Assembly: GCF_963853765.1 (NCBI RefSeq)
Contig: NC_088861.1
Span: forward strand, 30,380,001 to 30,444,000
Direction of reading: 5' to 3'
Origin: Magallana gigas
Lineage: Eukaryota
DNA length: 64,000 bases
Below the pieces are notes generated by a model. The model was not told the origin of the DNA. It searched no databases and saw only the letters and a list, made by a program, of their open reading frames with translations. The position numbers and the translations under genes are program-made. This document shows, one piece after another, positions 25,001 to 31,000 of the stretch; within the stretch, counting starts at the first letter, position 1; every line of letters begins with the position of its first letter.

Positions 25001-28000
25001 CCTGCTAGCATCTGCCTGTGAGCTAAGCTAAGTATCTTACCATTAAAAGAGGCAAAGTATTGTTGAACTGTGGTAATAAATCAGAAAAGTATAAAAGTTT
25101 ACTTCAACAGATTGTGTTAGTAGCTATATATGGCATTCAATGATGAGACAGTTTTTGTGAATTTTTGATTTAGCTTCAATAAAGGAGCCCTCTCTCCCTT
25201 CCCCCATTATTTTTTTTTTTTGGGGGGGGGGGATGAATCAGTAGATGAAAAAAAAATTGGAAAGGTTATAATATTGCAGCTAAACCTTAAAACAATTTGG
25301 TTCAGAATAATTACTGTATACAAAGTTATTTTCGCCCAGTGTAATTTTCGCCCGTCTACACTTGCAAACAGTTTCATCCCATCTCAAATTCGCTCATGCA
25401 GACACAATTGTGTTTTTAAATAGATAATTTGAGACATTGGAGTTCGCCCAATCTCAATTTCCCCCTCTGATGAGGCCAAAAAGGGCAAAAGTAAATTAAG
25501 GGCGAATATTTTCCTGTATACAGTATGTAATAAACTTTTGGAACAGTTCTAACTGATAACAGAAATATTTAATGAAAGATAACAATTGAAATCAACATAT
25601 TAATTTAAAACAATCATGAACTACATGGTAATCTCTTGAAAATACAACCATGCACTTCATTATTTAATAACAAAAATAATCGTAAAAACTTTTTTTTGAA
25701 AATTTCAAAACCCCAAATGAAGAATCCATTTTTTTCCCTCACCACTAAGATGTCTGCCAATGTGAAATGGCATTACTGGATAAGTACCGAGAAGTACCCC
25801 TACAAACAGTGACTTTGTAACATATACATGTATAGCTTGTCAACTTAGCTTTCTAAGACAATACCAATCTGAATGCTTTTGCACTATATCAGAAAAACTT
25901 TTCTTATGGTATTTGACGGTGAATAATGTTAGTGGTGAAAATTGTGAAATTTTTTTATCATTCTTAAAGGTAAAGTAAAACAACAATGAATGTTTCATTT
26001 TAGCATGATTTATAATTATAGAGATCTGATATTAATTAATATTATTACCAGACAAAACTGATTTAATTTTGAAATTTGAAGAAATTTATAAATGAGATCA
26101 TTTTTATTCCCCCATAGTTTCCAAATATTGAACTATGAAGGACAGATATCAAATTAAAGCCTTAACATGTACTGATATTAAAAAATACTGCACAGTTGAG
26201 AGAGTATTCACAAAAGAAAATGTATCAGATCTAAAAAAAAATTCATTAATTTGTCTTCCTGATAATCAAAATAGCAAAGTAGAGCAAGGTAAACCTTTCA
26301 AATCAATTTCTTAACCAAACAGCTCTCTCCTGCAATATGATTACATAAGATCTTTAAATAGCCCAATTTTAGCTCACCTGTGACACTCTGCTGCGGGTTG
26401 GCTATTTTGGATGGGGCCTCAGAGGCCTGGCTGTCAGACCGGGAGGTTTCCCTGTCTTTGGCCTCCAGACGGTCGACCGTCTTCTCGTCCCTGATGAACT
26501 TCCTCTTCTGAGTGGCTCTCTTCAAAACCCCCACCAGTGTGGCTACACTGAAGTGGTGGTGACACTCAGGGGGCCTGATAAGGGAAATTTTATAAAAGTT
26601 CATAATTGATTTTCAAACATACAGAATACTTAATTTTTTTTTTAAAAGTTTATATCCTTAGCATTAAGAAAATGAAACACTCATCCAAATAGGCCCTTCC
26701 CATTTTGCCTACTCCAAAATTATGACTTTGGCTCATTTAATTTATTTAACTGCTATTGATTTTTTTAAATGTCTCATTCTCTCTATTTCATATTCTTAAT
26801 TCTCACTCTATAACAAGCAAATTAAGTCTTCTCTCTCAAATCAACCCTTTACATATTATCTCCAAATTTGTGTCCAAGTTGATAATTTTCTCAATAACCA
26901 AAAAATACCCCCTAAAGCCCCCCCCCCCCTTTTTTTTACCCTCTCATGCCAAAATACAAACTTACAGCTCATCCCTGGCTAGTTCTGTTAGAGCTTTGAG
27001 ACGGGCCCCGAGTACTGCTGGAGCCCTGAATCCCATGGCGGCACACTTAGCCTTCAGAATGAGGCTGAAGTCAGGCTTGACGAGGGAGACCATGCGGAAC
27101 AGTGATCTGACGTCGATGGGGAGACTACAGCCGGGAGGGGCCGTCTCCTTGTTGTAGGTCATGTGGACGGCAAATGTTTTCTTGATGGAGATCTGAAAAA
27201 GCCCAGTATGATGTGGAATATCTGTCAACATTTTGAAAAGATTTATAACAAAGCTGTTTCCTATTCCTGAGAGTAATAAGGTTAACTTTGTAAACATAGG
27301 AAGACATACATGTTACACTACTTTTATTAAAAACTTAAATACAAAAATCTAGGAATAAATAAGCTGTTGAAGAATGAAAAAAATAAAAAATGTTCATGTT
27401 TATTTGAAAGTTTAAATTGAATCTTCATATTGGTAGTTAAGAGTTCAATTTTATCCGCAGTGACATAAATTATGAAAGGGGCCTTTTGCAATAAACCAAA
27501 ACTTATTCAACAAGTGATATCGACAAAGAGTGAAATAGAATACAGTATTGAATAAAACACTTTACTGACCTCCTGCCCGTCGCTGAGGGTAGCGTAGGGG
27601 TGTCTGGAGCGGAGGGCTGTGATGACCGCTGTCATTTGGTCCAGTAATGTAGACATGGCCTGTTTGTTCAGACTCTGTACCTCGTCAAAACAGCACCAGC
27701 AGCCATCCTAATGAAGTGTTAAAGAGAAATGTGCACTTTTATCTAACAAATAAATTAAATATCAAGGATCTGTTCTATTTAAAAAAAATTGATTCAAAAG
27801 TTTTCTCAAAACATGTAGAAGGACTCAAATTTCAATAGGGGGCTATGCTTTATGTACTGTCAAGCCAAAACATATTATATATAGCATATCTGACTATGTC
27901 AGCAAATTATCTAAGACTGTACCTACGAAAAACCTACTAGATATTTTAAGTATATGCTCTTGATTTCTGAACAGTACAACTCAATCAACACAAAATGTAC

Positions 28001-31000
28001 CATGCCTCCATGTACCCTTTATTATTTCCAAAGAATACAGTACCAGTATATCTTAAAAGGCTTCAAAATTAGTATAAAGGTTTCCTTAACACGACAGTAC
28101 ATACCATGGCGGTTCCTTGTACGATTTTCCCCATAGCGCTAGTGTCTGACTCGGTGGAACACTGGAACGTCCCAATGTAATGTCCCAGCACCGTGGCCAG
28201 CCCCTTCACAGTCTCTGTCTTTCCCACCCCCACAGGGCCGGACACACAGCTGCCCTGGTAGTTGTTGAGGGCCTGGGACATGGTCAGGAAGCAGCGCTCG
28301 GTGACCGGGGTCAAGGCCACTCCAGCGTTCGTTCCGTAAAACTCGTTGCCATAAATATAAGGCGTGTCTAGTATCCATATCAGGGGTTCATATTTGTCTT
28401 CTGTAAAGGATATTAATATCAGAATTTATTAACGATCTAATAAAGACAAAAAAAGTTTAAGCACTTGCATGCTTTTTTTTTTTTTTTAATCAAATTAGCA
28501 CACAATTTTGCAGATTTTTTTTTAGTTAAGAGTTAAAAAGCATCAGTACCACAGCATAAATTAATAATTGAGCTTTAAGTTTTAATGCATTGCATTGACT
28601 TGATAAAATAAAATAATTGTCACTTTTAACTTTTTTTACTCTGATCTGGGATGTTGAAACACATATGAGATTTAGCAAAGACAAAACTGTCCTGTCTAAG
28701 ATATTGTTATGCAAGTGGTAAATTGTTATATACAATATAGTTGTTAAAAATGGATGTAGATGGGGAAAATTGTAAGCAGATACATGAATTGTATAACACA
28801 AGTTTGAAAATTAAGAAAGCATTGTGTTAATCAAACATTAGTTGATTGCTGCGTCAGGTTTCAGTTTCTGCAAAACTTAAAACCTTGTTTTCCAATCAAT
28901 TTTTACAAGAACTTTCATCTTTCAAGTTGATTTGAATTTTATGAAAGTTAGACTGTGGCTTCATAGTAAAATACTTATAAGTATAGCTTTGTTGTTATAA
29001 AATAGCAAATATTATGAATTATAAATACTAGCTGTCACTGCAAAACACATTGAAATAATAAACAAAGAGTTTCATCTTTTTCTGACAATTTGAAAGCAAA
29101 TAAACACAATGGCACGTACATCACATATAAAGTTAAGATAATAGATGCCAAACAAATGTCAAAAAAATATGTTCACGCAGCTAATAAACACAATATAAAC
29201 ATAAAACAAAAATTTAAAACTGATAAAACAAAAAATAAAATGCAAAAATTTAAGTTGCTGACTGGCAACAATCATTTATTTAAATGAATAGACTTGTGAT
29301 AGTTAAAACTGTATACAGTTAATGGAGATTAATTGTTATATCTCGATCATGAAAAAGTGAAAAATTAGGAAAAATCAATATTGGATTCATGCATGCATAA
29401 AATTTATAAACAAAATTAAGGTGAACTTAACAAGAAAAATTTAATAATTTTTTTCTTTGAGGTCAAGGATCAATCTAATTAGCCAAACAATTCATGATAA
29501 TAATTAACGAATGGATGAAACACAAACAGATCAATGTTTACCACAGAGACTTGTACGGGTGTTTTGTTTTCCTGGGGACGCTGTGAAAATCATAAAGCAA
29601 TTGCAGCCATTTTAAGTCTGATAAATATAAATGATTGCAAAATCACTTTTGAGACAAACCCTTGAAGTTATTTTTTGATATGTTATCCCTTAAACTCAGT
29701 TCTTAACTTTCTCTATTTACCTATAGTATTAAAATACAATGAAGTGCAAACTATTTTGTTCTTACTAGATTATTTTTTAAGAAATACAATCATAAAATTG
29801 TGCAAAGTTATTCTTTTTTTTTTTAGATTTTTATATTTTAATTTTCATTGCTTGCAATTCTTGCCATTTTACTTTCTATTATCATTTTACTTTTAAAAAA
29901 ACTGAGTTTCGTCAATTTTTGGTCTTTAGTTTCCATTACCATGGCAACGAATATCCTTAGCAATAATTTCATGGAGCCATGCAACTATTTACATCAATGA
30001 GTTTAATATGCTAATTTTATGCAATATTAAAGAAAATCAGCAATGTGGGCATTGGGACCACTATATGAAATTATGGTCATAACAGCAAATTGATATTAAA
30101 TCCTCAAAGTTCATTTTTAAAATTTTTTGAAGGTGCCCATAACCTCAGCACTTATTTCAATTTAAACTCCACCCAATCCAAGACAAAAGCAATAAAAGAC
30201 TGCAAAGGGCCAAAGCTTTTGAAAGGTATCCATATATGTACAAATGTTGAAGGGGTCAAAAGTTCAGATACATGAATATCTTATATAGATATTAATTTTT
30301 GTAGAAAGGAGATTAGATTTTATATCATATGCATTTTTTCAGAGAATGCAAATCATATCTAAAAATAGTATGAATTAACAAAAAATAATGTAAAATCAAA
30401 TTTTTATAAAAATTATTTTTAAAAAGAATGGTGAATTGCATTTCAAAAACATTACAGAAAGTGGATTAAATGTTTGATAGACTGGTAAAGAATAAAAATA
30501 TCATTTAAATAGAACAGCAGGAGGAACTATATAAAACTGGTGATCATTAAAAGCTAAGAAATAAAAAATAAAAAAATATATATATAGCCCAACACCGATT
30601 TCTTATTTCAGCTGTATAAAGAATTCTTACGTATCGAGAGGTCACTTAGACTGGCCTCCGTTTTAATATCGACTGACTCCGTATCAACATTCTCATCGTT
30701 AGCTAATTAAACATACAAATTAACAAGTCAAACAAAGCTTGATTTCAATCATATAAATTGCCTGTTAGTTTATTATTAAAATTAGAAGTTACTTGATACA
30801 TGCAAACAATTGATATTTTTTAGTTTTAGTTTTTTTTTTGTTGCATATTTAGTTCATCATATTTTCTTTCCAAGATAAACTTGATGAAACTAATTTCATC
30901 CCCCTTTTATCCGTTTTCTTTTTGCACATTAACATTTTTATAATATTGCTTTGTTAAAAATTTCATCATAATAATGTTTATTATCAAATGTACAAATTAA

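What the first reader, a model, noticed from the sequence alone, without database searches (positions are those of the whole stretch)
26378..28400. AAA1 site is remodelled and lacks the sensor-II arginine
Seen: Walker A is GPVGVGKT (canonical GPAGTGKT). Walker B is CFDEVQS (canonical CFDEFNR). The sensor-I loop is TYNKETAPPG (canonical TMNPGYAGR). The sensor-II segment is HHHFSVATL (canonical HY[D/H]FGLR), so Arg is replaced by Ala. The Walker K and DE, the sensor-I Asn and the AAA2 arginine finger (PASVSR, exon 19770-19877) are kept. Inference: the site may bind ATP while hydrolysis or ring closure is impaired.
Basis: partly seen in the sequence, partly recalled or inferred. Interest (0 to 1): 0.8.

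Follow-up and report, generated by a model that had tools for sequence, protein, structure and literature searches.

The report
Oyster DNAHX dynein, degenerate AAA1 site
The altered ATP site is real, expressed and conserved. It belongs to the oyster copy of DNAHX, a dynein heavy chain family described in 2025 as non-motile, so this is a new member of a known kind rather than a new mechanism.

Summary
They lie in four minus-strand exons (28400-28105, 27707-27570, 27192-26966, 26574-26378) whose junctions a spliced RNA contig confirms with no mismatch.

The Ala at the sensor-II position (A2559, codon 26543-26541) is invariant in two RNA and two DNA runs from four studies. All 16 variants seen in these exons are synonymous.

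The gene is the Crassostrea ortholog of DNAHX (Chai et al., bioRxiv 2025). In an ML tree it sits in a 63-member clade (SH-aLRT 100) with the sea-urchin type protein. It shares the type's Walker-A Thr-to-Val change, the loss of the sensor-I Pro and Tyr, the AAA4 small-domain insertion and the aberrant stalk.

Sensor-II Arg is present in 15 of 15 canonical dyneins but in only 2 of 69 DNAHX proteins. It is Ala in oyster, scallop and mussel. The Walker-A Lys is kept in 67 of 68.

The urchin cryo-EM shows AAA1 holding ATP in a locked pre-powerstroke state. That supports "binds but does not hydrolyse" and does not support "impaired ring closure". For the oyster this is inferred, not shown.

The scan earlier noted a different oyster dynein with a dead AAA1 on another piece of this genome (s1-375610); it is not this gene.

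The parts
3915..60853 (-). The part of the oyster DNAHX gene that lies in the window. It covers residues 1-4156 of the 5495-aa protein P0203: tail, linker, AAA1-AAA4 and the start of the stalk.
   Evidence: tblastn of P0203 against the window gives colinear exon hits from 60853 down to 3915.
28105..28400 (-). AAA1 exon with Walker A GPVGVGKT. V2386 replaces the canonical Thr; K2388 and T2389 are kept.
   Evidence: The splice junctions are in RNA contig X15. The codons were verified.
27570..27707 (-). AAA1 exon with Walker B CCFDEVQS. D2434 and E2435 are kept.
26966..27192 (-). AAA1 exon with the sensor-I loop TYNKETAPPG. N2486 is kept. Canonical Pro becomes K2487 and the 'backdoor' Tyr becomes T2489.
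   Evidence: The canonical residues and their roles are from Chai et al..
26378..26574 (-). AAA1 small-domain exon with HHHFSVATL, followed by the start of a disordered Ser/Lys-rich insertion.
   Evidence: In the AF2 model, residues 273-314 (P0203 2597-2638) have pLDDT below 50.
26541..26543 (-). GCC codon for A2559, at the sensor-II arginine position.
   Evidence: No variant was seen here in four runs. In the AF2 model it is residue 235, at the N-terminus of helix 234-267, in a block with mean pLDDT 91.
22473..22621 (-). Next exon. It holds the end of the insertion and the resumption of the AAA1 small domain (…EHALVAQTIKEIIGPRF).
   Evidence: The loose end of RNA contig X15 at 26378 continues at 22621. 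tblastn hit.
19770..19877 (-). AAA2 exon with ASPASVSRS. R2894 is the arginine finger facing AAA1.
10815..11000 (-). AAA4 exon with the degenerate P-loop GAVGSHLSTL, which has no Walker-A Lys. The sea-urchin DNAHX has the same change (GAIGSHLTTL).
8913..9513 (-). Two exons carrying an insertion of about 60 aa in the AAA4 small domain (LPWAGDLSEE…KVLLQERIKLQHRSDNMKAKNE). It aligns with the PS2i insertion of sea-urchin DNAHX and is absent from DNAH5, DNAH8 and dynein-1.
   Evidence: Alignment and translation. PS2i is described in Chai et al..
30629..30706 (-). A 26-aa cassette exon just upstream of the AAA1 Walker-A exon. RNA contigs both include it and skip it.
   Evidence: Loose ends at 28400/28401 continue at 30631 or at 31224. 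tblastn hit for residues 2303-2328.

Best explanation
The window carries most of the Crassostrea ortholog of DNAHX. This metazoan dynein heavy-chain family arose from the outer-arm DNAH5/8 (gamma) class and was described from sea-urchin sperm as non-motile. Its AAA1 pocket keeps the nucleotide-binding parts: the P-loop Lys/Thr, and in the oyster also Walker-B Asp-Glu, the sensor-I Asn and the AAA2 Arg finger. It has lost three things canonical dyneins never lose: the P-loop Thr (now Val), the sensor-I Pro and 'backdoor' Tyr (now Lys and Thr), and the sensor-II Arg (now Ala). By analogy with the urchin cryo-EM structure, the site most likely holds ATP as a structural ligand and hydrolyses it poorly or not at all. 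That would keep the motor in the closed pre-powerstroke form, helped by the AAA4 small-domain insertion that the oyster also has. The identity, orthology, expression and conservation are shown here. The ATP-bound, non-hydrolysing state of the oyster protein is inferred.
For: P0203 (Crassostrea angulata LOC128183562, 5495 aa) is 100% identical to the spliced AAA1 exons. P0261 (Lytechinus variegatus, 5272 aa) has V2221, S2322, T2324 and K2393 exactly as published for DNAHX. The ML tree of 78 proteins and 577 columns puts the oyster and the type protein in one clade of 63 (SH-aLRT 100, stem length 0.93), next to the DNAH5/8 and OAD-gamma sequences. Sensor-II Arg is present in 2 of 69 family members against 15 of 15 canonical dyneins. 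Walker-A Lys is kept in 67 of 68, Walker-B Glu in 37 of 68, sensor-I Asn in 30 of 68 and the Arg finger in 43 of 68. The oyster shares the AAA4S insertion, the Lys-less AAA4 P-loop and a stalk insertion with the type protein. About 630 aa lie between Pfam AAA_8 and AAA_9 with no MT-domain hit, while the DNAH5 control scores 168.7 bits. Spliced RNA contigs exist, and all 16 variants are synonymous. The cryo-EM evidence for ATP-bound AAA1 and the pre-powerstroke lock in the urchin ortholog is in Chai et al..
Against: No biochemistry or structure exists for the oyster protein. The oyster keeps Walker-B Glu, the sensor-I Asn and the Arg finger, so slow hydrolysis is not excluded. From general knowledge, classic-clade AAA ATPases work without a sensor-II Arg. 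The source is a preprint, and no DNAHX chain is in the held PDB copy. The AF2 model carries no nucleotide, and its closer resemblance to ATP-state dynein-1 structures is weak evidence.
Confidence: 0.8

Rival explanations
1. AAA1 of the oyster protein is still a working, perhaps slow, ATPase. The loss of the sensor-II Arg is tolerated or compensated, for example by the conserved His triad H2553-H2555 or by the retained Arg finger, so the protein is a modified motor or a timer rather than a locked pseudo-motor.
For: Walker-A Lys/Thr, Walker-B Asp-Glu, the sensor-I Asn and the AAA2 Arg finger are all intact in the oyster and in most non-heterobranch molluscs. The exons are under purifying selection. 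The HHHF motif is widespread in the family.
Against: The urchin ortholog keeps the same residues, with Lys at sensor II, and still retains ATP with no post-powerstroke class. Across the family the catalytic Glu, Asn and Arg finger are repeatedly lost while the P-loop Lys is kept, which points to selection for binding and not for turnover. The stalk lacks a recognisable microtubule-binding domain.
Confidence: 0.17
2. The Ala is an assembly error, a rare allele, or a sign that the gene is decaying into a pseudogene.
For: None was found. The only hint is the long low-complexity insertions in the gene.
Against: The codon is identical in two RNA and two DNA runs from four studies. The transcripts are correctly spliced. 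All 16 variants are synonymous. The same Ala is present in scallop and mussel orthologs. The reading frame is intact over 5495 aa.
Confidence: 0.01
3. The gene is the oyster ortholog of DNHD1 (Kollmar class 11), the other divergent 'orphan' dynein with a degenerate AAA1.
For: It resembles DNHD1 superficially: long insertions and a divergent AAA1. This was my own first guess.
Against: The gene clusters with the DNAHX type protein at SH-aLRT 100, and its tail and motor are most similar to DNAH5/OAD-gamma. DNHD1 is reported to lack the Walker-B catalytic residues, and the oyster keeps them. No named DNHD1 sequence was placed in the tree.
Confidence: 0.02

Closest known systems
DNAHX, type protein Lytechinus variegatus XP_041462850 (Chai, Suchenski Loustaunau, Zheng, Yang, Zhang; bioRxiv 10.1101/2025.01.18.633724)
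   Same: They fall in the same clade. Both are over 5200 aa. Both have Val for Thr in Walker A (GxxGVGKT) and an N-x-E-T sensor-I loop without Pro or Tyr. Both have lost the sensor-II Arg while keeping Walker-B DE and the AAA2 Arg finger. Both have a Lys-less AAA4 P-loop, the AAA4S PS2i insertion, a stalk insertion and no Pfam MT domain.
   Different: Sensor II is Ala in the oyster and Lys in the urchin. The oyster has a single sensor-II helix segment, while echinoderms and hemichordates carry an extra tandem segment of about 30 aa after it. The oyster protein is 223 aa longer and has its own low-complexity insertions. No structure or biochemistry exists for the oyster protein.
Outer-arm dynein gamma class: DNAH5/DNAH8, Chlamydomonas gamma HC, Kollmar class 3
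   Same: This is the closest canonical class in every region, from tail through linker and AAA1-4 to the C-terminus. The overall AAA1-AAA2 fold is the same.
   Different: Canonical members have invariant GPAGTGKT, CFDEFNR, MNPGYAGR and HYDFGLR motifs and a Pfam MT stalk. The oyster protein differs in all four motifs and has no MT match.
Kollmar (2016, PMC5100056) class-12 dynein heavy chain (DHC12)
   Same: Class 12 is restricted to Holozoa/Metazoa, has a tail like the class-3 outer-arm dynein, and has an 'extremely unusual stalk' without a typical microtubule-binding site. The oyster protein shows both properties.
   Different: The equivalence is inferred. No CyMoBase DHC12 sequence was available to compare. 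Kollmar did not analyse the ATP sites, and the DNAHX preprint does not cite that classification.
DNHD1 (Kollmar class 11)
   Same: It is another long, insertion-rich dynein heavy chain with a poorly conserved AAA1, and it has been proposed to be non-motile.
   Different: It is a different lineage. It is reported to lack the Walker-B catalytic residues that the oyster protein keeps. It is present in mammals, where DNAHX is reported to be absent.

Membership tests
DNAHX | Forms one clade with the type protein XP_041462850, separate from the canonical dynein classes and nearest to DNAH5/8 | tested here: met
   In the ML tree, the 63 DNAHX-like rows, including the oyster P0203 and the type P0261, sit on one side of a branch with SH-aLRT 100. 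That clade joins the OAD-gamma/DNAH5/8 group with support 99. P0261 was identified as the type by its length of 5272 aa and by residues V2221, S2322, T2324 and K2393.
DNAHX | Unusually long heavy chain (over about 5000 aa) because of insertions spread along the protein | tested here: met
   P0203 is 5495 aa. Insertions are seen in AAA1S, AAA4S and the stalk.
DNAHX | AAA1 changes: Walker-A Thr replaced, sensor-I Pro/Tyr lost, sensor-II Arg lost | tested here: met
   The oyster has V2386, K2487/T2489 and A2559. The urchin has V, S/T and K.
DNAHX | Pre-sensor-II insertion (beta-hairpin plus helix) in the AAA4 small domain | tested here: met
   An insertion of about 60 aa aligns with the urchin insertion and is absent from DNAH5, DNAH8 and dynein-1. 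This was tested at sequence level only; its fold was not modelled.
DNAHX | Insertions in the stalk and microtubule-binding domain, with no canonical MTBD | tested here: met
   The oyster shares a stalk CC1 insertion with the urchin. About 630 aa lie between AAA_8 and AAA_9 with no PF12777 hit, while the DNAH5 control scores 168.7 bits. The MTBD itself lies outside the window and was read from P0203.
DNAHX | AAA1 holds ATP and the motor is locked in the pre-powerstroke state; forms a heterodimeric phi particle | not testable with these tools
   This needs cryo-EM or biochemistry of the oyster protein. The AF2 model has no ligand.
Canonical motile axonemal dynein (DNAH5/8 class) | Invariant AAA1 catalytic motifs GPAGTGKT, CFDEFNR, NPGYAGR and FGLR | tested here: not met
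   Sensor-II Arg and Walker-B DE are invariant in all 15 canonical sequences aligned (Walker-A Thr and sensor-I Asn in 14 of 15, the exceptions being a frog DNAH8 and a fungal DNAH2). The oyster differs in each of the four motifs.
Kollmar class-12 DHC | Tail homologous to the class-3 (OAD gamma) tail, and a stalk without a typical microtubule-binding site | tested here: met
   For tail residues 1-1500, the summed blastp scores are 288-495 against DNAH5, DNAH8 and OAD-gamma sequences, against 80-122 for DNAH11. There is no Pfam MT domain. No direct comparison with Kollmar's own sequences was made.
DNHD1 (class 11) | Orthology to vertebrate DNHD1; AAA1 lacking the Walker-B catalytic residues | tested here: not met
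   The oyster keeps D2434 and E2435 and groups with the DNAHX type protein. No named DNHD1 sequence was in the tree, so the phylogenetic half of this test is indirect.

The most novel reading that the evidence does not exclude
DNAHX is the same thing as Kollmar's class-12 dynein. The still-unidentified second heavy chain of the 'dynein-X' heterodimer may then be the class-13 dynein, as Kollmar predicted in 2016 from tail homology to the two outer-arm classes. The scan reports that the class-13 gene in this same oyster genome also has a dead AAA1 (s1-375610). If so, dynein-X would be a two-headed complex in which neither head hydrolyses ATP at AAA1.
Probability: 0.2. Interest if true: 0.6.

Novelty: new member of a known kind. 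Interest (0 to 1): 0.3.

Why it matters
The result gives the oyster gene, annotated only as 'uncharacterized protein', a name and a likely role as a non-motile dynein of sperm flagella. It extends the DNAHX observations to 69 proteins from placozoans to amphibians. Across these, the P-loop lysine is almost invariant and the sensor-II arginine almost always absent, which is the pattern expected of a protein that needs to bind a nucleotide but not to turn it over. It also links two descriptions of what appears to be one family that do not cite each other: Kollmar's class 12 and DNAHX. Oysters offer abundant sperm for biochemistry and have a more radical sensor-II change (Ala) than the urchin (Lys). 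It does not open a new mechanism.

Tried and rejected
1. My first guess was DNHD1. I dropped it once the closest full-length relatives turned out to be 5100-5650-aa 'DNAH5/8-like' proteins and the DNAHX preprint was found.

2. phmmer of the sensor-II exon alone against PDB sequences found nothing, because the exon is short and mostly low-complexity. The position was fixed instead by spacing from the conserved 'PD' and 'QL' motifs.

3. A MAFFT run aligned the echinoderm sequences to a second, duplicated helix segment and reported Gly at sensor II. I corrected this with the PD+47 rule and with the published K2393.

I left that row out, rebuilt the alignment as A2, and did not send P0274 to any other tool.

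5. The AF2 model and the Foldseek search cannot show a nucleotide or side-chain distances. The nearest basic residues are K2566/R2567, at +7/+8 (about two helical turns into the sensor-II helix); DNAH5 also has a basic residue (Arg) at +7.

6. The held PDB copy has no DNAHX chain, so no direct structural comparison was possible.

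Full report
**What is in the sequence.** The window is AT-rich animal DNA. Public runs that hold it are labelled oyster. A multi-exon dynein heavy-chain gene runs along the minus strand over almost the whole window.

The finding's coordinates enclose four exons: 28400-28105, 27707-27570, 27192-26966 and 26574-26378. I derived these from GT-AG sites. A 1306-nt spliced RNA contig (run X15) then confirmed them by joining exactly these four pieces with no mismatch.

The AAA2 exon 19877-19770 reads …ASPASVSRS. Pfam places the first three exons in AAA_6, the 'hydrolytic ATP binding site of dynein'. 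The individual codons were checked.

**Is the Ala really at the sensor-II position?**
- In all 15 canonical dyneins I aligned, the Arg of HYDFGLR lies 47 residues after the conserved Pro-Asp of the preceding strand and 11 after the Leu of 'QL'.
- The oyster has Ala at exactly that spacing.
- The published sensor-II residue of sea-urchin DNAHX (K2393, assigned from a cryo-EM map) has the same spacing.
- In an AlphaFold2 model of residues 2325-2935 (mean pLDDT 81.6), A2559 is the second residue of a long helix, in a block with mean pLDDT 91. Sensor II is known to sit at the N-terminus of small-domain helix H7 (PMC4047620).

**Error, allele or pseudogene?** None of these.
- Two RNA and two DNA runs from four different studies cover the codon and show no difference there.
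- The 16 differences those runs do show in the four exons are all synonymous.
- The annotated protein P0203 (Crassostrea angulata LOC128183562 isoform X10, 5495 aa, representative of a 110-member cluster) is 100% identical to the 285 aa.

**What the gene is.** A full HMMER search with the Walker-A exon gave many exon-sized fragments. Three long proteins were clearly closer than any canonical dynein, and they came from a caecilian, a frog and amphioxus. Two word searches with those proteins then returned a large family of 5100-5650-aa proteins from placozoans, cnidarians, echinoderms, hemichordates, annelids, nemerteans, molluscs, tunicates, amphioxus, non-teleost fishes and amphibians. The score gap to canonical DNAH5 was wide.

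A literature search found the preprint that describes this family as DNAHX. The Lytechinus variegatus protein of 5272 aa in my hits (P0261) has V2221, S2322, T2324 and K2393 exactly as published, so it is the type protein.

An ML tree of the AAA1-AAA2 region (78 proteins, 577 columns) places the oyster and the type protein in one clade of 63 with SH-aLRT 100 and a long stem. Within the clade the branching largely follows the species phylogeny. The clade sits next to the DNAH5/8 and OAD-gamma sequences.

The oyster protein also shares these features with the type protein:
- the insertion of about 60 aa in the AAA4 small domain, which the preprint calls PS2i;
- the AAA4 P-loop without a lysine;
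- a stalk insertion.

It has about 630 residues between the Pfam AAA_8 and AAA_9 domains with no match to the microtubule-binding stalk profile. A DNAH5 control matches that profile at 168.7 bits.

**The AAA1 site across the family.**

| Position | Canonical dyneins | DNAHX family |
|---|---|---|
| Walker-A Lys | 15 of 15 | 67 of 68 |
| Walker-A Thr (before GKT) | 14 of 15 | 11 of 68 Thr; 39 of 68 Val |
| Walker-B Glu | 15 of 15 | 37 of 68 |
| Sensor-I Asn | 14 of 15 | 30 of 68 |
| AAA2 Arg finger | 15 of 15 | 43 of 68 |
| Sensor-II Arg | 15 of 15 | 2 of 69 (two neobatrachian frogs) |

The sensor-II position is Ala in oyster, scallop and mussel, and also in Owenia, a hemichordate, amphioxus, gar and bichir. 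It is Glu in heterodont bivalves, Ser in many gastropods, Lys in sea urchins, starfish and sea cucumbers, and Gln in most amphibians.

So the Ala is shared by orthologs, and loss of the Arg is a family trait. Near-invariance of the P-loop lysine together with drift of the catalytic residues is the pattern expected when nucleotide binding is selected and turnover is not.

**How it probably works.** The urchin cryo-EM shows ATP in AAA1 of DNAHX, while DNAH8 in the same sample shows ADP. It found no post-powerstroke class for DNAHX. [quoted passage not shown]

The oyster has the same Walker-A Val, the same N-x-E-T sensor-I loop, a more radical sensor-II change and the same insertion. I therefore infer the same behaviour: ATP bound as a structural ligand, little or no hydrolysis, and a closed pre-powerstroke ring.

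This is inference from orthology and was not shown for the oyster. The AF2 model of AAA1-AAA2 superposes better on ATP, ADP-Vi and phi-state dynein-1 structures (TM 0.71-0.73) than on apo or post-powerstroke ones (0.49-0.64). I give this little weight.

The main rival is a slow but working ATPase. The oyster still has Walker-B Asp-Glu, the sensor-I Asn and the Arg finger. From general knowledge, classic-clade AAA proteins lack a sensor-II Arg and still hydrolyse ATP.

**Relation to earlier classification.** Kollmar (2016) defined a metazoan/holozoan class-12 dynein with a tail like the class-3 outer-arm chain and an 'extremely unusual stalk' without a typical microtubule-binding site. He predicted that it pairs with class 13.

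The oyster protein's tail is most similar to the DNAH5, DNAH8 and OAD-gamma sequences and much less similar to DNAH11. Its stalk fits Kollmar's description. DNAHX is therefore probably class 12.

The preprint does not cite that work and leaves the partner chain unidentified. I did not examine that gene.

**Verdict.** The feature is the hallmark of a family already described in a 2025 preprint, and probably named as a class in 2016. This is a new member of a known kind, of moderate-to-low interest. Its value lies in annotation and in the family-wide tally.

Noticed in passing
window 30629-30706 (minus strand): A 26-aa cassette exon lies just upstream of the AAA1 Walker-A exon. RNA contigs of run X15 join 28400 either to 30631 (exon included) or to 31224 (exon skipped), and run X17 also shows the skipped form.
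   Followed up: partly
window 10815-11000 (minus strand): The AAA4 P-loop reads GAVGSHLSTL, with no Walker-A lysine. The same change is in sea-urchin DNAHX (GAIGSHLTTL) and in the other family members aligned, so it is a family trait and not specific to the oyster.
   Followed up: partly
P0261:2380-2440, P0214, P0262, P0263 (echinoderm and hemichordate DNAHX): After the sensor-II helix these proteins carry a second, similar segment about 30 aa further on (…EYHQLFSIGSIAA…). It resembles the single oyster segment more than their own first copy does, and it misleads automatic alignments.
   Followed up: partly
P0226, P0227, P0270, P0215, P0222 (heterobranch gastropod DNAHX): In these snails AAA1 has degenerated further. 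Walker B is lost in the three freshwater pulmonates (LKGV, LKES, LKDA). The AAA2 Arg finger is Ser in all five.
   Followed up: no
P0181 (Bufo), P0184 (Phyllobates): These are the only two family members with Arg at the sensor-II position (FSLRAM, FSLRSM). Their Walker B is DD and their Arg finger is Lys, so this looks like a secondary reversion without restored catalysis.
   Followed up: no
window 26378-26500 and 22473-22621 (minus strand): A disordered insertion rich in Ser, Lys and Arg follows the sensor-II helix in the AAA1 small domain (AF2 pLDDT below 50 for P0203 2597-2638). Part of it, the SRS.S motif, is conserved across the family.
   Followed up: no
P0099 (Argonauta hians, 4378 aa): This cephalopod protein sits on a very long branch (1.83) inside the DNAHX clade. 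Its Walker B reads LAEG and it has Ser at sensor II. Its placement is unsure.
   Followed up: no
I did not examine it.
   Followed up: no
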